Positions 1,784-26,679 of a DNA stretch of 64,000 nt are shown piece after piece. This stretch comes from Mobula birostris (Eukaryota): contig NC_092377.1 of assembly GCF_030028105.1 (NCBI RefSeq), positions 4,717,079 through 4,781,078 of the forward strand. The letters run 5' to 3'. The position numbers and the translations under genes were made by a program. Position 1 is the first letter of the stretch, and each line of letters opens with the position of its first letter. The notes under the pieces were generated by a model. It did no database searches. It saw only the letters and a program-made list of their open reading frames with translations, and was not told the DNA's origin.

Positions 1784-2131
1784 ATCCCGCGGATGATCCC
1801 GTCCTTGTGCAGGATCCACCAATCAGCAAGGTGCTGGAGGGTGTAACTGTCCAGCTCCACTGTGCCTTATATAATGCCAGTGTGAATGTCACCGATGTCC
1901 ACTGGTACCACCAGTGGCCTGGGAACAAGAGCGAGTGGGCGTTGAGTCACTTTGTGAATGACTCTGTGAGCAGGTCTGGGTATATTTCTGACCGCTTTCA
2001 GTCTTACAGGAATGTCGTGAGTAACAGTTACATTCTGACCATCAGTAATACATCTATTAGTGACACTGCAGCGTACAACTGCAGCGTGTGGAGTTACATC
2101 TACGGAGGAGGAACACAGCTCAATGTAACTG
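1784..2131 (+). CDS. Ig V-set exon with germline-joined J-like segment (V1); internal exon, phase 1/1
   Basis: Acceptor ACACAG ends 1783; donor GTAAGT at 2132; 348 nt open. PADDPVLVQDPPISKVLEGVTVQLHC...DVHWYHQWPG...DRFQSYRNVVSNSYILTISNTSISDTAAYNCSVWSYIYGGGTQLNVT has the B-strand Cys, C-strand Trp, D-x-A-x-Y-x-C and a J-type GxGT-L-V motif in one exon. Confidence 0.92.
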
Positions 2132-17321: not shown

Positions 17322-17412
17322 GTAACATTGTTCAAGACCACGTTCCCCACACAGCAACTCCATCCAACTACCCCTCAAGCTGGGTTTAAAGTGATGATAT
17401 TCTCCCTTTCAG

Positions 17413-17757
17413 GTGCAGTCGTTCCTGTCCTTATCCAGTCCCCGAGCATACAGCGTGTCACTGAGGGTCACACGGCGTGGTTATGGTGTACCATGAGAAA
17501 CGCCAGGCTGGAAGACACCGACGTCCACTGGTATCAGAAACTGCCTGGGCAGGACATGGAGTGGGTTTTAACACACAGGGCAGGAGGCAGCCCAGAGTGG
17601 GGACAGGGTTTCACTGGGAGGTTTCTGCCCTACAGAGACACGTCCAACAGCAGCTTCACCCTAATAGTCACAGACGTGGTGCACAATGATTCTGCCGTCT
17701 ATTACTGCAGAGTGCGGGGAGGCATCAATGGGAACGGCACCCAGCTCATCGTAACCA
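17413..17757 (+). CDS. Ig V-set exon with germline-joined J-like segment (V2), phase 1/1
   Basis: Acceptor TCTCCCTTTCAG ends 17412; donor GTGAGT at 17758; 345 nt open. AVVPVLIQSPSIQRVTEGHTAWLWC...DVHWYQKLPG...GRFLPYRDTSNSSFTLIVTDVVHNDSAVYYCRVRGGINGNGTQLIVT. Confidence 0.95.
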
Positions 17758-18825
17758 GTGAGTACAAGTTCTATTTATTCAGCAGTGTGTTCCTGAATGG
17801 ATTTATTAGATATAGTAAGCACGACGTTGTGTGTGGAAAGTCACATTCAATCAGCTTGACTGAGTTTTCTGAGGAGCTGAAGAAGATAATGAAGGATTGG
17901 GAAGTGGATGTTGTCTACGTTAACGTTAGTAAATCTTTCAATCATGTGACACGGCAATGTAGCGGTTTGCATAATGACTTACAGAGATAGTGATCGAGGT
18001 TCAAATCCTACAAAATACTGGAGGAACTCAGCAGGCCAGGCAGCATCTATAGAAATGAGCACAGTCCAGAGAACAAAGAATGGGAAGAGAGGGTGATTGT
18101 CTGGCTGGAAGACTGTCAGTAGTGACTAGGATCAGGGCTGTGCCCCAGCTCCAACAATCTGTATCGATGAGGGGACCAAGTGTATCCAAGCCTGTCGGGG
18201 ATGCAGAGGTGCTGGCAGGGTGATTGGTCAGGAGGATGCAGAGACGTACGGGGATGTCGACACACGGAGTGAATGTGCAAGGTGAAGACAGTTAGAATAT
18301 CATGTGGACAAATGTGAGATCATTCTCTTGGTAGGAAAAATAGAAACAAAGAGTAATTTCTGAATGGAGAGAGACTGAGGGATATTCATGTCCTGGGGAA
18401 TCTGGGTGGCCTCGTACACAAAGATCAAACCCAGCAGGCAGGTACAACTGGTGATTCGGAAAGGAACCCCTTGTCCATTATTGTGGGACAGATTTGAGTA
18501 CAAGAGTAACGATGCCTTACTGGAATTATGGTCTCCAGTGAGACGGCAACAAGAAACAGGAAGTCTCTGAGGGTCGTGCTTTATTCAGTCACCCACTGGG
18601 TCAGTTGGTACAAGCAGGTGGAACAGCATCATTCCTTCAGGGATTGGGTAAATATTTGGAAAGGACATTTCACAGGACTCTGGGGAATGAGGGGACTGGG
18701 ATCAGTGAGCATCTTTTTCAAAGAGCTGGCACAGGAGGATGGGCTGAATGGATTCCTTCTACACTGACAGTGAGCTTCCCAGATGTTTACCCACTGATGT
18801 GATTTCCTTTCCGTTCCTCAAACAG

Positions 18826-18945
18826 AGATGTCCCGAGCCCCATCGTACCTGGCCTGGCTCATTCTGGCTGTCGTGCTGGGAGTTCTCGCTGTCACTGGAG
18901 GCATTTTCCTCATCAGACGCAGAGCGTTTAGAAACCACCCGTCCC
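18826..18945 (+). CDS. Transmembrane exon of the V2 receptor
   Basis: Acceptor CCGTTCCTCAAACAG, donor GTACGT at 18946, phase 1/1. (K)MSRAPS-YLAWLILAVVLGVLAVTGGIFLI-RRRAFRNHPS: 23-aa uncharged helix followed by a basic stop-transfer. Confidence 0.9.
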
Positions 18946-19111
18946 GTACGTGTGACTAAATGGTTCATTCTGATCCCATTGTTGTGTGGGGTTATTAAAA
19001 TGTGAAGGTCGGGGACTGATTGTGAAAGAGCCCGTCGTTGTGTTGTGACAGCAATGTGGGACTCACAGCTCGGAGACGGCTGTTACTGACACTTTATACT
19101 CTATTTCACAG

Positions 19112-19185
19112 ACCCACCCACAGAAACTGATCACCGGAGCCCAGGGGTAGATTATGAAAATGTTTCCATGGCCAGGGATGTCCCG
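19112..19185 (+). CDS. Cytoplasmic exon 1, with VDYENV (ITIM-like / YxN)
   Basis: Acceptor CTCTATTTCACAG, donor GTGAGT at 19186, phase 1/0; (H)PPTETDHRSPGVDYENVSMARDVP. Confidence 0.88.
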
Positions 19186-20009
19186 GTGAGTTCTGATGCT
19201 TTTCTCAGATGAGTAGAATTGTGTGAGGGTCGCTCTGGTATGTTCTTGGCTTCTTACATCAGGGATATTCCCCAGTGACATTGTGGTTCATTGAATATTT
19301 CTGCAATGTCTGAATGATCTGCAAATGTATGTGGTGTAACTGTTCCTGGATATTGACCACAGACCATACAGCAGTACAGCACAGAAACAGGCCCTTCTGC
19401 CCATCATGGCGGGAGGGGAGGGGGCATAAGCTAGAAGGTGATAGGTGAAGCCAAGTGAGTGGGGGAGGAGGATGCAGTGAGTAGCTGAGTGGTGTCAGTG
19501 GAAAAGTTAAAAGACTGAAGACACACAGGAAAAGGTGATAGTCAAATAAAGAGGTAAGAAGAGAGCCAGAGTGGGGAACGGAAGAAGAGGGAAGGAGGAT
19601 GTGAGAATTTACTGGAATATGGAGAAATCATTGATCTAGCTATCAGTTTTGAGTCTGCCCAGATGGAATATGAGGTGTTTCTCCTTCAACCTGAGAGCAG
19701 CCTCATCATTGTAGTAAAGACAGCCATGGATCAACATGTTGGAATTGGAATGGGGATTGGAATCAAAGATGAGAGGACAGAAGGCAATGGAAGAAAGGAA
19801 CATGGGAGGATCACCAGAGGGAGCAAATGGGCAGGTAAGGAGGTAAATAGGAATGGGGAATGGTGAATGAGTGGGGCATTACAGTACTTTTTTCCATAGA
19901 TGCTGCCTGACCTGCTGAGTTCCTCCAGAACTTTGTGTCTCTTACTTGGATTTCCAGCATCTGCAGATTTTTCTCTTGTTTGTAATGATTCAGTTGCGTT
20001 CTGTTGTAG

Positions 20010-20051
20010 GGTTCAGGAGGTCACCAGGTCGATTCAAACAACACCTACATG
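20010..20051 (+). CDS. Cytoplasmic exon 2 (first part of ITAM)
   Basis: Acceptor TTCTGTTGTAG, donor GTAAGG at 20052, phase 0/0; GSGGHQVDSNNTYM. Confidence 0.85.
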
Positions 20052-20141
20052 GTAAGGAAGGTCACCTCTGGAACATTGAAGCTTTTTCCACAGCATGAGC
20101 TGTCAAGCTGTTGTTCACACCATTTCTGTTTTCTCTACTAG

Positions 20142-20184
20142 GCTCTGCAACATCCCACTCAGTCCATCTACGGTCATCTCCAAG
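20142..20184 (+). CDS. Cytoplasmic exon 3 (rest of ITAM)
   Basis: Acceptor TTTTCTCTACTAG, donor GTACGT at 20185, phase 0/1; ALQHPTQSIYGHLQ completes YMAL-x7-YGHL. Confidence 0.87.
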
Positions 20185-20779
20185 GTACGTTGCAACATCT
20201 TTGGACAGGCCGGCTAAACCATATCAACTGCTGTGGAAGTGGTGAGACTGGAGAAGTCTTTATACAGGAACAGCCAGTGAGCAATGAGCCCCGTGTGGTG
20301 ATGGATCAGCGGCAGCTCAGTCTGATCACCAATTGGACCAGGGTGTGAATTCACACCTTTTACTGAATCAGGTCACTCAGCCATGCACAGACATCCTCAC
20401 AGTCCTGGTAAAGCTGAGTGTCTAAAAGACCCAGTGCTGTTCATCACCTCCATTGGTTTCAAGGCTGAGCAAGTGTTGTCCCTGATTTTTCCAGCAGGAT
20501 CTGTTACATGAGTTGCTGGAATTTGGAAGTTGATGCCCAAGGCAAAACTCCCACCCACACACCCCGTCCTCTTCTGGACCCATCAGTAATTCCTCATGGT
20601 TTCAGAGAAAGGATATCCATCCCTGAGCAAGCTCATAGTGTCATCTGAACGAGATCTACTGGCGAGATGAGGCAGAGTTCAATGTTCTCGGCCATTTGCA
20701 CAATTAGATTGCAGTGCTCTCAGTATAGACATGTTTAGAAGAGTTCATTTTCATGTTCAAGTTTCTTCAAGCCAGTCTA

Positions 20780-21190
20780 TGGTGTCCTGGTATCAGCACC
20801 GGACTTCAATCCGCTCCCAGGTTTGAATCTGTCCGGTACCTGGCACACTTCCTGTCTGTGCTCAGTGGAGTGCTGAGCTGTCAACTCAAACTCATGAAAA
20901 CAGATAAATGTTAACGAAATGGCTGGATTGCCACCCGATGCACCACAAGGCATGGAGAGGAAGCACAACCAGGTGTATTCAAGACCCCGATGGCAGTGGG
21001 AAAGAAGCTGTTGTTGTACCTCGATGTGTGTAACTTCAGGCTCCTGTACCTGCTGCCTGAAGATGGCATTAAGTAGCGGATATGGCCCGGATGGTGGGGT
21101 TCTCTGATGGATGGCACCTTCCTGAGACATCATTCCTTGTAGATGCTCTCAATGGTGGGAAGAGTTGTACTCATGATGGAACTGGTTGAG
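20780..21190 (-). mobile_element. Rex1/Babar- or L2-type LINE 3' fragment
   Basis: SIREPHHPGH...SGSRYRSLKLHTSRYNNSFFPTAIGVLN is the typical C-terminus of this LINE group. Confidence 0.75.
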
Positions 21191-21404
21191 TCCTGGACTC
21201 TCTGTAGACTCTTGTGTTCCTGTGTACTGGAGATCCCACACCAAAACGTGGTAAAACTAGGTGTGATATCACTGAATCCCTTGTGTTCCTGTTTACTGGA
21301 GATCCCACCCAGAATGTGATACAAGAGGAGCTGCCAATGTCAATGGAGTCCACTCTCATGGATGCAGAGAAACCATTTGTTCCATGGGGAATCCAGAACA
21401 TGGG

Positions 21405-24400
21405 GCATAGAAACATAGAAAATAGGTGCAGGAGTAGGCCATTCGGCCCTTCAAGCCTGCACCACCATTCAGTATGATCATGGCTGATCATCCAACTCAG
21501 AACCCTGTACCGGCCTTCCCTCCATACCCCATGATCCCTTTAGCCACAAGGGCCATATGTAACTCCCTCTTAAATATAGCCAATGAACTGGCCTCAACTG
21601 TTTCCTGTGGCAGAGAATTCCACAGATTCACCACTCTCTGTGTGAAGAAGTTTTTCCTCATCTCGGTCCTAAAAGGCTTCCCCTTTATCCTCAAACTGTG
21701 ACCCCTCGTTCTGGACTTCCCCAACATCGGGAACAATCTTCCTGCATCTAGCCTGTCTAATCCATTTAGGATTTTATACGTTTCAATCAGATCCCCCCTC
21801 AATCTTCTAAATTCCAACGAGTATAAGCCTAGTTCATCCAGTCTTTCATCATATGAAAGTCCTGCCATCCCAGGAATCAATCTGGTGAACATTCTTTGTA
21901 CTCTCTCTATGGCAAGGATGTCTTTCCTCAGATTAGGGGACCAAAACTGCACACAATACTCCAGGTGTGGTCTCACCAAGGCCTTGTACAACTGCAGTAG
22001 TACCTCCCTGCTCCTGTACTCGAATCCTTTTGCTATAAATGCCAGCATACCATTTGCCTTTTTCACCGCCTGCTGTACCTGCATGCCCACTTTCAATGAC
22101 CGGTGTATAATGACACCCAGGTCTCATTGCACCTCCCCTTTTCCTAATTGGCCACCATTCAGATAATAATCTGTTTTCCTGTTTTTGCCACCAAAGTGGA
22201 TAACTTCACATTTATCCACATTAAATTGCATCTGCCATGAATTTGCCCACTCACCTAATCTATCCAAGTCACCCTGCATCCTTTTAGCATCCTCCTCACA
22301 GCTAACACTGCCGCCCAGCTTCGTGTCATCCGCAAACTTAGAGATGCTGCATTTAATTCCCTCATCCAAGTCATTAATATATATTGTAAACAACTGGGGT
22401 CCCAGCACTGAGCCTTGCGGTACCCCACTAGTCACTGCCTGCCATTCTGAAAAGGTCCCGTTTATTCCCACTCTTTGCTTCCTGTCTGCCAACCAATTCT
22501 CTATCCACATCAATACCTTACTCCAATACCGTGTGCTTTAAGTTTGCACACTAATCTCCTGTGTGGGACCTTGTCAAAAGCCTTTTGAAAATCCAAATAT
22601 ACCACATCCACTGGTTCTCCCCTATCCATTCTACTAGTTACATCATCAAAAAATTCTATGAGATTCGTCAGACATGATTTTCCTTTCACAAATCCATGCT
22701 GACTTTGTCCGATGATTTCACCGCTTTCCAAATGTGCTATTATCACATCTTTGATAACTGACTCTAGCAGTTTCCCCACCACCGATGTCAGGCTAACCGG
22801 TCTATAATTCCCTGGTTTCTCTCTCCCTCCTTTTTTAAAAAGTGGGGTTACATTAGCCACCCTCCAATCCTCAGGAACTAGTCCAGAATCTAAAGAGTTT
22901 TGAAAAATTATCACTAATGCATCCACTATTTCTTGCGCTACTTCCTTAAGCACTCTGGGATGCAGACCATCTGGCCCTGGGGATTTATCTGCCTTTAATC
23001 CCTTCAATTTACCTAACACCACTTCCCTACTAACATGTATTTCCCTCAGTTCCTCTATCTCACTGGACCCTCTGTCCCCTACTATTTCTGGAAGATTATT
23101 TATGTCCTCCTTAGTGAAGACAGAACCAAAGTAATTATTCAATTGGTCTGCCATGTCCTTGCTCCCCATAATCAATTCACCTGTTTCTGTCTGTAGGGGA
23201 CCTACATTTGCCTTAACCGATCTTTTTCTTTTCACATATCTATAAAAGCTTTTACAGTCAGTTTTTATGTTCCCTGCCAGTTTTCTCTCATAATCTTTTT
23301 TCCCCTTCCTAATTAAGCCCTTTGCCCTCCTCTGCTGAACTCTGAATTTCTCCCAGTCCTCAGGTGAGCCACTTTTTCTAGCTAATTTGTATGCTTCTTC
23401 TTTGGAATTGATACTATCCCTAATTTCCCTTGTCAGCCACGGGTGCACTACCTTCCTTGATTTATTCTTTTGCCGAACTGGGATGAACAATTGTTGTAGT
23501 TCATCCATGCGATCTTTAAATGCTTGCCATTGCATATCCACCGTCAACCCTTTAAGTGTCATTTGCCAGTCTATCTTAGCTAATTCACGTCTTATACCTT
23601 CAAAGTTACCCTTCTTTAAGTTCAGAACCTTTGTTTCTGAATTAACTATGTCACTCTCCATCGTAATGAAGAATTCCACCATATTATGGTCACTCTTACC
23701 CAAGGGGCCTCCCACGACAAGATTGCTAATTAACCCTTCCTCATTGATCAATACCCAGTCTAGAATAGCCTGCTCTCTAGTTGGTTCCTCGACATGTTGG
23801 TTCAAAAAACCATCCCGCATACATTCCAAGAAATCCTCTTCCTCAGCACCCTTACCAATTTGGTTCACCCAATCTACATGTAGATTGAAGTCACCCATTA
23901 TAACTGCTGTTCTTTTATTGCACACATTTCTAATTTCCTGTTTAATGCCATCCCCAACCTCACTACTACTGTTAGGTGGCCTGTACACAACTCCCACCAG
24001 CGTTTTCTGCCCCTTAGTGTTATGCAGCTCTACCCATATCGATTCCACATTCTCCCGGCTTATGTCCTTCCTTTCTATTGCGTTAATCTCCTATCTAACC
24101 AGCAACGCCACCCCACCTCCTTTTCTTTCATGTCTATCCCTCCTGAATATTGAATATCCCTGAATGTTGAACTCCCATCCTTGGTCACGCCTGCGCCAAG
24201 AGAGGTCCCAATGATCCAAAAACTTGAATCCCTGCCCCCTGCTCCAATCCCTCAGCCACGCATTTATTCTCCACCTCATCGCATTCCTACTCTCACTGTC
24301 ACGTGGCACAGGCAGTAATCCCGAGATTAATAATCTCGGGATTACTGCCTGTGCCACGTGACAGTGAGAGTGGCAAGCATTTAAAACTCCCTTCCTAGCT

Positions 24401-25347
24401 CCCTATATTCTCCTTTCAGGACCTCTTCCCTTTTCCTACCTATGTCATTGGTACCTATATGTACCATGACTTCTGGCTCCTCACCCTCCCACTTCAGGAT
24501 ATCTTGGACACGATCAGAAATATCCCGGACCCTGGCACCAGGGAGGCAAGCTACCATCCGGGTCTCTGGACTGCGTCCACAGAATCACCTATCTGACCCC
24601 CTTACTATCGAGTCCCCTATCACAACTGCCCTCCTCTTCCTTTCCCTACCCTTCTGAGCTACAGGGCCAGACTCTGTGCCGGAGGCACGGCCACTTTCGC
24701 TTCCCCCGGGTAAGCTGTCCCCCCCAACAGTACTCAAACAGGAGTACCTGTTGTTAAGGGGCACAGCCACCGGGGTACTCCCTATTACCTGACTTTTCCC
24801 CTTCCCCTCCTAACCGTGACTCACTTGTCTGCCTCCCGTGGCCCCGGCGTGACCACCTGCCTGCAACTCCTCTCTATCACCTCCTCACTCTCCCTGACCA
24901 GACGAAGGTCATCGAGCTGCAGCTCCAGTTCCGTAACGCGGTCCCTTAGGAGCTGCATCTCGATGCACTTGGCGCAGATGTAGACGTCCGGGAGGCTTAG
25001 AGACTCCAGGGCCTCCCACATCTGACACCGAGAACAGCAAACTGCCCTCACACTCATACTGCCCCTCTCCTCAAATAACAACAGAAAATGAATGCCAAAC
25101 CTTCCTCGCCTTGCCCGTTTCCGCCTAAACCCGGTGAGCCGAAGCCCTTAAGCCTTCGCTCTGCTCCCGGCTCACTCTGCTGCCCGCTGTATGAGGCTCT
25201 GTTCCTTTTAAATCTGCCGCGCTGCACAGCCCGACGTCACACGCCTGCGCAGTCCCGCCTCTCAGAACGCCGATGGAAAAAAACCCGAAAAATTCAAAAA
25301 TGTCTTCCTCCGCACTCCCGCTCCGATTCTCAGACTTCCTTCTTCGA
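21405..25347 (-). mobile_element. Near full-length CR1 (family B) in the receptor's last intron, with internal deletion and palindrome
   Basis: 5' UTR at 25080-25347 matches 36421-36680; ORF1 pieces; ORF2 as 22510-24048 (512 aa), 22124-22513 and 21497-22096; CATAGAAA tail at about 21405. Confidence 0.95.
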
Positions 25348-25900
25348 ATCAACACCACCATAGCCCGGCTGCTCTGGAAACACTGGTGTTGCCATGGAGA
25401 TGTACAACCCTCTCCAACACAGGTGGGAATTCCCGGTTGGAACCGGATGGAATTTGCTGGTTTTGTACTGTGAAGGTTGGTCAGAGCTGAAACACATCGG
25501 CCAGTATCTGATCAAGTGACAGAATGGATTGGAGGGACTGAGTGGTTTTTTCTCCACACCCACTTTGCAGAGTCTGTTCAGGGCCCCTGATATGAGTCCA
25601 GCATTAGGACAGCAGCATTGTGTTGCTGATAGAGTCCCCCACCCATGGGTGCTATTGCCCTCAGCACCCTGCATCCAGCAGTAGCCTGGCATGGTAGTTA
25701 GAAACATGCATGTTGTCCATATCATTATCCCTGGCCACAGGTCCATGTTCAGGGTTAGCAGAGGTGACTTATCCCTGAGACCCCAAAACCCTGACAGTCA
25801 GAGACTCAGGAAAACCACTCAGACAGTGCCTGCCACATAGTTTAACTCTCCCATTCTTCACCGGCTCACCTCACACAACTCATTGTTGTTTTTGTTTCAG

Positions 25901-25929
25901 CCGACAATAAACCACCGTCTCGCAGCTGA
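25901..25929 (+). CDS. Probable terminal coding exon of the V2 receptor
   Basis: Strong acceptor TTGTTGTTTTTGTTTCAG; phase 1 gives (A)DNKPPSRS-stop. Alternative acceptors exist nearer, e.g. 20498 giving GSVT-stop, so this is not unique. Confidence 0.45.
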
Positions 25930-26679
25930 ACCGCAGTGGGAATCGGTCTGTATGACCTCGGCTGGGGGAGGAACCCTGGATGGATTTCTGCACAGACACA
26001 CTCATCAGACATGGAAAAGTTTAAGGCTCAGACATTCTACTCATTTGATGTGCAAGACAAGAATTTTACCAGAGACAACATTTGGGATGTTTCTATCAGG
26101 GGAAACTGACCCTGGTGGATGGTTGAGATCGAGGGGGTGGAATATGATCAGAGCCCAGTTGTTGGAACATAGAACAGTACAGCACTGGACTGGCCATTCC
26201 GCCCACAATACTGTGCTGATCTTGGTGACAATTTGTACTAAATGTCCTCCTCCTGTGTATCATCCATATCCCTCCGTTCCCTTCAATGTCATTTCGAACA
26301 TCGGCCACAGAACAATATTGCACTGGAACAGACCCTTTGGACTTGATGTGTCAAAATAATTAAAATTTGCAATCAAATGCCCAGTGAATCTAATTATTTC
26401 TGCCCACACAATGTCCATATCCCTCCACTTCCTGCCAATTCATGTGTCTACCCAAGGACATCTTGAACGTCTCTGTCACATTTGTCAGCAGCGCCACCCC
26501 GGCAGTGAATTCCAGACTCTCCCCCTCTCTGTTTCAGAAACTTGCCCCTCGTATCTCCTTTGAAATTACCCTCTCTCACTTTCAATGCCTGCCCTCTGGG
26601 ACGAGACATTTCACCGGTGGAGAAAAGACACTGGTATCTATCTGTGCCCCACATAATATTACATACATTAATATATTTG

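What the first reader, a model, noticed from the sequence alone, without database searches (positions are those of the whole stretch)
19112..20184. One cytoplasmic tail carries both an ITIM-like motif and an intron-split ITAM
Seen: tail reads ...PGVDYENVSMARDVP|GSGGHQVDSNNTYM|ALQHPTQSIYGHLQ. VDYENV fits the ITIM consensus (V/I/L/S)xYxx(L/V) and YxN (Grb2-type). D-x4-YMAL-x7-YGHL fits the ITAM consensus. The ITAM exists only after splicing, with a phase-0 intron inside the first YxxL. Known: as recalled, FcR-gamma/CD3-zeta-type ITAMs are split at the same position. Inference: this is a dual activating/inhibitory receptor. Skipping the 42-nt phase 0/0 exon (20010-20051) would remove the first ITAM tyrosine in frame and leave VDYENV plus SIYGHL, a two-ITIM-like form.
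Basis: partly seen in the sequence, partly recalled or inferred. Interest (0 to 1): 0.75.

Follow-up and report, generated by a model that had tools for sequence, protein, structure and literature searches.

The report
Manta-ray receptor tail with built-in ITAM
The tail of this manta-ray immune receptor gene really carries a spliced, well-conserved activation motif (ITAM), but its supposed inhibitory motif is a one-copy quirk, so this is a solid example of a known receptor design, not a new dual switch.

Summary
Six exons with AG/GT borders translate exactly to residues 139-354 of an NCBI-predicted Mobula birostris protein. Contigs of four public runs carry the junctions 19185|20010 and 20051|20142.

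The ITAM (N-x-x-YMAL-x7-YGHL) is real. Both tyrosines are invariant in 13-15 tails from nine ray and shark species. It is cut Yx|xL by a phase-0 intron, the position two papers call typical of classical ITAMs.

The ITIM reading is weak. The valine at -2 of VDYENV occurs only in this copy, relatives have alanine, and two have alanine at +3. The conserved core is Y-E-N, a Grb2-type site. An ITIM-like match arises by chance in about 5% of shuffled tails.

No evidence supports skipping of the 42-nt exon. Skipping of the membrane exon is seen instead.

The gene is best read as the activating type in a large, apparently unnamed elasmobranch family of paired V(J)-domain receptors with ITAM or ITIM tails. 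Fish NILT and NITR receptors, CEACAM3 and FCRL are precedents. This scan had already found paralogues of the family elsewhere in this genome.

The parts
1784..2131 (+). Intact V(J)-type exon, phase 1/1, ending GGGTQLNVT. It is probably an optional cassette exon of the same gene.
   Evidence: Pfam V-set hit, cacag| acceptor and |gtaagt donor. It is 92% identical to the corresponding V domain of paralogue P0019. The four-V paralogue P0055 has this V type directly before its membrane-proximal V.
17413..17757 (+). Membrane-proximal V(J) domain exon, phase 1/1, ending GNGTQLIVT.
   Evidence: 100% identical to P0004 and P0011.
18826..18945 (+). Exon for a short stalk, an uncharged transmembrane helix and the start of the tail (phase 1/1).
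   Evidence: A contig in run X1 covers 18826-18945 with one mismatch.
19112..19185 (+). Tail exon 1 (74 nt, phase 1 to 0), encoding PPTETDHRSPGVDYENVSMARDVP. It holds the Y-E-N-V site, which is ITIM-like only in this copy.
   Evidence: Joint 19185|20010 in runs X1, X5 and X2.
20010..20051 (+). Tail exon 2 (42 nt, phase 0/0), encoding GSGGHQVDSNNTYM. This is the first half of the ITAM up to Y-x.
20052..20141 (+). 90-nt phase-0 GT..AG intron that cuts the first YxxL between YM and AL.
   Evidence: Joint 20051|20142 in runs X1, X5, X2 and X3. The position is the one described as typical in PMC4536121 and PMC2110893.
20142..20184 (+). Tail exon 3 (43 nt, phase 0 to 1), encoding ALQHPTQSIYGHLQ. This is the second half of the ITAM.
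25901..25929 (+). Coding part of the terminal exon, (A)DNKPPSRS plus the stop codon.
   Evidence: exact match to the C-terminus of P0004. The C-terminus is conserved in stingray homologues. This junction was not covered by the read-laying run.

Best explanation
This is the signalling tail of an expressed Mobula birostris gene for a type I membrane receptor. The receptor has antigen-receptor-like, germline-joined V(J) domains, an uncharged transmembrane helix and its own classical ITAM.

The ITAM (N-x-x-Y-M-A-L, seven residues, Y-G-H-L) is assembled by splicing two mini-exons across a phase-0 intron at Yx|xL. This is the hallmark arrangement of the ancestral ITAM exon pair. By inference, Src-family kinases phosphorylate both tyrosines after ligand binding, and a Syk/ZAP-70-type kinase docks through its tandem SH2 domains. 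On this reading the gene is the activating type of a paired-receptor family whose sister genes carry ITIM/ITSM-like tails on very similar V domains.

The membrane-proximal tyrosine is best read as a conserved Grb2-type pY-E-N docking site that supports activation. Its ITIM look in this copy comes from a private alanine-to-valine change at -2.

Shown here: the exons, the splicing, the conservation and the paired family. Inferred: phosphorylation, kinase and adaptor binding, and the activating outcome.
For: The exon model translates exactly to NCBI model P0004. The spliced junctions occur in contigs of four runs from two studies.

T-Y, L-Q and the second Y are invariant, and D/N sits at -3, in tails from nine ray and shark species. 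The chance of an ITAM is 0.03-0.24%.

[quoted passage not shown] The transmembrane helix has no charged residue, so no adaptor is needed.

Paralogues with 74-89% identical V domains carry ITIM-type tails. A V-domain tree mixes the two tail types as much as shuffled labels do.

Y-E-N is kept in 13 of 15 aligned ITAM-type tails, and also in P0057, P0059, P0060 and P0063, while -2 and +3 vary. pYxN as the Grb2 SH2 motif is established knowledge.
Against: No binding or signalling data exist for any member. The runs are only guessed to be RNA, and the contigs may come from a near-identical paralogue or another individual (1-4 mismatches per exon). The second ITAM tyrosine sits in a conserved S-x-Y-x-x-L/I context that also fits the ITIM consensus. 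This copy's V-D-Y-E-N-V does fit the ITIM pattern. The leader and first V exon of the NCBI model lie outside the window.
Confidence: 0.7

Rival explanations
1. One reading: one tail combines a working ITIM (VDYENV, recruiting SHP-1/2) with a working ITAM. The receptor is then truly dual, tunable by skipping the 42-nt exon.
For: VDYENV matches (S/I/V/L)xYxx(I/V/L) in this copy. Skipping cyt2 is in frame. Tails combining both motif types are known: trout NILT1 is listed as ITIM/ITAM (PMC3022915), and FCRLs carry mixed motifs (PMC2413239).
Against: The valine at -2 is private to this copy, and relatives have alanine. Two relatives have alanine at +3, which breaks the ITIM pattern but keeps Y-E-N. 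An ITIM-like match arises in about 5% of shuffles of the tail. Asparagine at +2 favours Grb2 (established knowledge). No cyt2-skipped joint is listed, and no family protein has that form.
Confidence: 0.12
2. The motif works mainly as an inhibitory module. The conserved S-x-Y-x-x-L/I second tyrosine would act as an ITIM, or the ITAM would signal in inhibitory (partial phosphorylation) mode.
For: Serine at -2 of the second tyrosine is at least 90% conserved. Both consensus patterns overlap there.
Against: The family already has a separate, clearly different ITIM/ITSM-type tail on sister genes. The exact seven-residue spacing, D/N at -3 and the classical exon split are all kept. An isolated ITIM would not require any of these.
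Confidence: 0.08
3. The tyrosines are chiefly YxxPhi sorting or endocytosis signals, and the ITAM spacing has no function.
For: YMAL and YGHL both fit YxxPhi (sequence).
Against: Sorting signals would not need conserved seven-residue spacing, D/N at -3, or the ancestral phase-0 exon split across rays and sharks.
Confidence: 0.05
4. This particular copy is a decaying or unexpressed paralogue, and the spliced contigs come from sister genes.
For: The contigs carry 1-4 mismatches per exon. The first V and leader exons are outside the window. The locus is full of transposon remains. An earlier scan note reports one dead copy in the cluster (unchecked).
Against: All six exons in the window are open with consensus splice sites and equal the NCBI model residue for residue.
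Confidence: 0.05

Closest known systems
Classical ITAM exon pair of the signalling subunits (FcR-gamma, CD3 chains, CD79a/b, DAP12)
   Same: Same consensus, D/E/N-x-x-Y-x-x-L/I-x7-Y-x-x-L/I. Same two-exon coding with the border inside the first tyrosine module, in phase 0 (PMC4536121; PMC2110893; window).
   Different: Those proteins are small adaptors with an acidic transmembrane residue and almost no ectodomain. Here the ITAM sits on the ligand-binding chain itself, and the transmembrane helix is uncharged.
ITAM-bearing CEACAMs (human CEACAM3/4, dog CEACAM23-30), paired with ITIM-bearing CEACAM1
   Same: IgV-type ectodomain, transmembrane exon, and several tiny tail exons with an ITAM split by a phase-0 intron. 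Activating and inhibitory forms are paired, and TM/tail exons are exchanged as modules (PMC2110893). A horn-shark CEACAM/PSG-like protein (P0063) carries a tail of the same layout, A-Y-E-N-F followed by S-T-Y-M-x-L...Q-S-I-Y-x-x-L. It is 37% identical over 68 residues, E 6e-8 pairwise.
   Different: The ectodomains here are antigen-receptor-like V(J) domains with the canonical cysteines and a GxGTxL J motif. They are not cysteine-less CEACAM N domains.
Teleost NILT and NITR receptors
   Same: Multigene families of V-type IgSF receptors with an ITAM or ITIMs in their own tails. Trout NILT1 is listed as ITIM/ITAM, and 'a few' NITRs carry an ITAM. NITR V domains have J-like motifs (PMC3022915).
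   Different: NILT V domains are NKp44-like with CX3C-type motifs, and the second NITR domain is V/C2-type. Here all domains are V(J). The tail profile found no teleost protein. A review notes no NITRs reported outside ray-finned fish (PMC6795676). Orthology was not tested.
Mammalian FCRL1-6 and Fc-gamma-RIIA
   Same: Ligand-binding IgSF chains that carry ITAM or ITAM-like motifs, in FCRLs together with ITIMs, in one tail (PMC2413239; Fc-gamma-RIIA from general knowledge).
   Different: They have C2-type ectodomains and non-classical ITAM spacing or an 'ITAM-like' sequence. No sequence relationship was detected.

Membership tests
Classical ITAM | Sequence consensus D/E/N-x-x-Y-x-x-L/I-(x)7-Y-x-x-L/I | tested here: met
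   N-N-T-Y-M-A-L, then Q-H-P-T-Q-S-I, then Y-G-H-L. The consensus wording is from PMC4536121.
Classical ITAM | Encoded by two exons, border inside the first tyrosine module, phase-0 intron | tested here: met
   Border YM|AL at 20051/20142, 90-nt GT..AG intron, phase 0. The junction is seen in contigs of four runs. Literature.
Classical ITAM | Both tyrosines and the +3 L/I conserved among homologues | tested here: met
   Y49 and Y60 are invariant, L52 is invariant and L63 is at least 90% conserved in 13 tails. The 15-sequence alignment from nine species agrees.
Classical ITAM | Doubly phosphorylated motif binds the tandem SH2 domains of Syk/ZAP-70 | not testable with these tools
   Needs peptide-binding or cell assays.
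ITIM | Consensus (S/I/V/L)-x-Y-x-x-(I/V/L) at the membrane-proximal tyrosine, kept among homologues | tested here: not met
   The pattern is met in this copy only (V-D-Y-E-N-V). Position -2 is alanine in 12 of the 13 aligned tails that carry this motif (Y-E-N, with +3 varying), and +3 is alanine in two copies. The chance rate is about 5%.
ITIM | Recruits SHP-1/SHP-2/SHIP when phosphorylated | not testable with these tools
   Needs pull-down or reporter assays.
ITAM-bearing transmembrane signalling subunits (FcR-gamma, CD3-zeta, DAP12) | Acidic residue in the transmembrane helix and a minimal ectodomain | tested here: not met
   The helix LAWLILAVVLGVLAVTGGIFLI has no charged residue, and the protein carries V domains.
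Paired activating/inhibitory IgSF receptor family | Closely similar ectodomains joined to opposite tail types within a species | tested here: met
   M. birostris P0008, M. hypostoma P0012 and Hypanus sabinus P0014 have V domains 86-89% identical to this one but carry ITIM-type tails. The V tree needs 10-12 tail-type changes, as many as shuffled labels.
Teleost NITR | N-terminal V with J motif plus a second V/C2 (I-type) domain; orthology to bony-fish NITR genes | tested here: inconclusive
   The J motif is present, but all domains are V(J). No teleost hit came from the tail profile. No direct comparison with NITR sequences was run.
CEACAM family | Cysteine-less IgV-like N domain | tested here: not met
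   The V domains here keep the canonical C...W...YYC pattern. Only the tail resembles that of shark CEACAM-like P0063.

The most novel reading that the evidence does not exclude
The YEN-plus-ITAM tail is an ancient mobile cassette of mini-exons. In elasmobranchs it has been grafted onto unrelated ectodomains: antigen-receptor-like V(J) domains here, CEACAM-like N domains in the horn shark, and ITIM-type TM/tail stems in catshark and whale shark. In this one manta copy, a private A-to-V change has turned the Grb2-type site into a working ITIM as well, giving a natural single-chain receptor with switchable output.
Probability: 0.12. Interest if true: 0.55.

Novelty: new member of a known kind. 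Interest (0 to 1): 0.38.

Why it matters
It documents, with splice evidence, a classical ITAM with its ancestral exon split on a ligand-binding, antigen-receptor-like V(J) chain in cartilaginous fish. The elasmobranch family that carries it is large and apparently has no name. That is useful for two questions: how antigen-receptor-type V domains were coupled to signalling before or beside rearranging receptors, and how ITAM and ITIM tail cassettes are shuffled between receptor families. The specific claim of a dual switch would matter more, but the evidence speaks against it being a conserved feature.

Tried and rejected
- Exon structure in other species. The look-ups gave nothing usable: no record for the horn-shark protein and no DNA for the stingray gene because the file was too large. 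The one locus fetched (L001, bamboo shark) held only an ITIM-type gene, whose two tyrosine motifs sit in a single last exon.
- Family name. Four full-text searches found no description of the family. One further search was rejected for a term that was too short.
- NCBIfam gave nothing. The PDB sequence search gave only antibody V domains.
- A profile of the tail, run against 1.8 billion proteins, found only elasmobranch relatives plus three repeat or low-complexity hits that I disregard: P0058, P0061 and P0062.
- ITIM-type tail exons of paralogues are not present in the window, so alternative ITAM/ITIM tails within this gene are rejected.
- Cyt2-exon skipping. It is in frame, but it is absent from the listed joints and from all family proteins. 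Note that 65 joints were not shown, and contigs drop rare forms.
- The first attempt to find sequencing runs failed because the server was busy.

Full report
**What is in the sequence**

The window is vertebrate DNA, rich in LINE-type remains. The best protein matches show that it comes from the giant manta ray, Mobula birostris. Two NCBI models, P0004 (354 aa) and P0011 (292 aa), are 100% identical to the V exon.

I re-derived the exons from the DNA:

| Exon | Coordinates | Size / phase |
|---|---|---|
| V(J) exon | 17413-17757 | phase 1/1 |
| Stalk + transmembrane exon | 18826-18945 | phase 1/1 |
| cyt1 | 19112-19185 | 74 nt, phase 1 to 0 |
| cyt2 | 20010-20051 | 42 nt, phase 0/0 |
| cyt3 | 20142-20184 | 43 nt, phase 0 to 1 |
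| Terminal coding piece | 25901-25929 | ends in the stop codon |

All borders are AG|exon|GT. Joined together, the exons translate residue for residue to P0004 139-354. The only correction is that cyt1 ends at 19185, because the GT donor begins at 19186. The leader and first V exon of the NCBI model are not in the window.

**Is it spliced?**

I laid the contigs of four public runs, from two studies and two coded organisms, on 17400-20400.
- The joint 19185|20010 appears in three runs.
- The joint 20051|20142 appears in all four runs.
- Both joints have GT..AG ends.

The runs are only guessed to be RNA, and low-depth intronic contigs are present too. The contigs carry 1-4 mismatches per exon, so they may come from another individual or from a near-identical paralogue. 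Spliced joints still argue for transcripts of this gene or its closest kin.

The last junction (20184 to 25901) lay outside the stretch I could lay. It rests on the exact match to the NCBI model and on the conserved C-terminus.

**The ITAM**

The motif is N-N-T-Y-M-A-L, then seven residues, then Y-G-H-L. It fits the consensus D/E/N-x-x-Y-x-x-L/I-(x)7-Y-x-x-L/I as quoted in PMC4536121.

Chance is a poor explanation. The pattern occurs in 0.03% of shuffles of this tail and in 0.24% of random tails of average composition.

Conservation is strong. I compared 13-15 tails from Mobula (two species), Hemitrygon, Hypanus, Pristis, Pristiophorus, Heterodontus, Rhincodon and Scyliorhinus.
- T-Y, L-Q and the second Y are invariant.
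- The final L/I is kept throughout.
- Position -3 is always D or N.
- Two Chiloscyllium proteins add a further genus.

The intron cuts the first module as YM|AL in phase 0. [quoted passage not shown] That the exact cut is Yx|xL in FcR-gamma and CD3-zeta is my recollection, not something I tested here.

It argues that this ITAM descends from the ancestral ITAM exon pair rather than being a look-alike.

**The ITIM-like motif**

V-D-Y-E-N-V fits the ITIM pattern, but the fit is private to this copy.
- Two other M. birostris paralogues read R-A-D-Y-E-N-V (P0055) and G-A-D-Y-E-N-V (P0057).
- Both M. hypostoma homologues, the stingrays, the sawfish, the sawshark and the horn shark have alanine at -2.
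- Two copies have alanine at +3 (Y-E-N-A), which breaks the ITIM pattern.

The part that is kept is Y-E-N. Tyrosine followed by asparagine at +2 is the established Grb2-SH2 motif.

With three tyrosines in the tail, some ITIM-like match turns up in about 5% of shuffles. The only conserved ITIM-consensus context is S-x-Y-x-x-L/I around the second ITAM tyrosine, where serine at -2 is at least 90% conserved. I keep that as a minor rival reading.

**Alternative splicing**

Skipping the 42-nt exon would indeed be in frame, leaving VDYENV plus SIYGHL. I found no trace of this form. No such joint is among those listed, although 65 joints were not shown and contigs drop rare forms. None of about 70 family proteins has it.

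Other events do appear:
- One contig joins 17757 directly to 19112, skipping the transmembrane exon in frame (run X2 record 10).
- The same form is predicted in sawfish (P0016) and bamboo shark (P0066, P0067).
- A paralogue model (P0057) skips cyt3 and loses the second half of the ITAM.
- A stingray model (P0026) retains an intron.

**The family**

Homologues are numerous in rays and sharks. NCBI labels them 'uncharacterized' or gives them misleading names such as kappa light chain-like or JAML-like. They carry two to six V(J) domains.

The tails fall into types:
- the ITAM type described here;
- an ITIM/ITSM-like type, T-V-Y-A-T-V ... F-Y-A-D-I-Q-F ... T-E-Y-A-V-I-K;
- a third type with two Y-x-N sites.

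V domains 74-89% identical to this one sit on ITIM-type tails in the same or sister species. A maximum-likelihood tree of the membrane-proximal V domain mixes tail types as thoroughly as shuffled labels: 10-12 changes against a shuffled mean of about 11. I left out rows without a recognisable tail and two duplicate isoforms. This mixing is the signature of paired activating and inhibitory receptors.

The ITAM mini-exons also seem modular. In catshark, whale shark and bamboo shark they follow an ITIM-type transmembrane and cyt1 segment.

A profile of the tail, run against 1.8 billion proteins, found only elasmobranch proteins. Among them is a horn-shark CEACAM/PSG-like protein with cysteine-less V-like domains and a tail of the same layout. 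That tail is 37% identical over 68 residues, with E 6e-8 pairwise and E 9e-5 library-wide.

I found no paper describing the family.

**How it most likely works**

An uncharged transmembrane helix and an intrinsic classical ITAM mean the receptor needs no adaptor chain. By analogy with all studied ITAMs, Src-family kinases would phosphorylate both tyrosines after ligand binding. A Syk/ZAP-70-type kinase would then dock, and the upstream pY-E-N site would recruit Grb2-type adaptors. These steps are inference.

The design is known. Carp and trout NILTs carry ITAMs, trout NILT1 is listed as ITIM/ITAM, and a few NITRs carry an ITAM (PMC3022915). CEACAM3/4 and dog CEACAMs have the same split ITAM on IgV receptors. 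FCRLs mix ITAM-like and ITIM motifs.

**Verdict**

The claim of a dual activating/inhibitory receptor rests on a copy-specific residue and is not supported as a family feature. The proposed exon-skipped isoform has no evidence.

The gene is already in public annotation. Earlier notes of this scan (unchecked by me beyond my own locus) report paralogues of the same family, with the same split ITAM, from about 850 kb before to about 350 kb beyond this window. I class the finding as a new member of a known kind, of moderate interest mainly to comparative immunologists.

Noticed in passing
window 1784-2131 (+): An intact V(J) exon (phase 1/1, seven N-x-S/T sequons) lies 15 kb upstream of the membrane-proximal V exon, with no transmembrane exon of its own in the window. 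The four-V paralogue P0055 has this V type directly before its last V. It is therefore probably an optional cassette exon of the same gene that the NCBI models skip.
   Followed up: partly
window 17757|19112 (run X2, record 10): A contig joins the V exon directly to tail exon 1, skipping the transmembrane exon in frame. That would give a secreted form carrying the tail. The same form is predicted in sawfish (P0016) and bamboo shark (P0066, P0067).
   Followed up: partly
P0063, P0068, P0069 (Heterodontus francisci, 'pregnancy-specific glycoprotein 22-like'): A shark CEACAM-like protein with three cysteine-less V-like domains carries a tail of the same layout (A-Y-E-N-F ... S-T-Y-M-D-L ... Q-S-I-Y-H-D-L). 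This suggests exchange of the TM/tail cassette between unrelated IgSF families.
   Followed up: partly
P0039 vs P0040 (Scyliorhinus canicula); P0029 vs P0031 (Pristiophorus japonicus): In each pair the V domains are near-identical, and the catshark pair also shares an identical transmembrane segment and first tail part. Yet one member ends in the ITAM and the other in the ITIM-type sequence. These could be alternative 3' exon sets of one gene or very recent duplicates.
   Followed up: no
window 18010-18058 and 19891-19971: These short stretches are covered at depths of tens of thousands to about 200,000 in all four runs. Many contigs run off into unrelated sequence there. They are pieces of a very abundant, transcribed interspersed repeat inside the introns.
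   Followed up: no
L001 31975-32088 (Chiloscyllium punctatum): In an ITIM-type family member both distal tyrosine motifs (Y-Y-A-D-I and E-Y-A-T-I) lie in one last exon. This contrasts with the split ITAM.
   Followed up: partly
window 25906-25911: An AATAAA hexamer lies inside the coding part of the terminal exon. The next such signals are at 26359 and 27441. The 3' end of the transcript was not determined.
   Followed up: no
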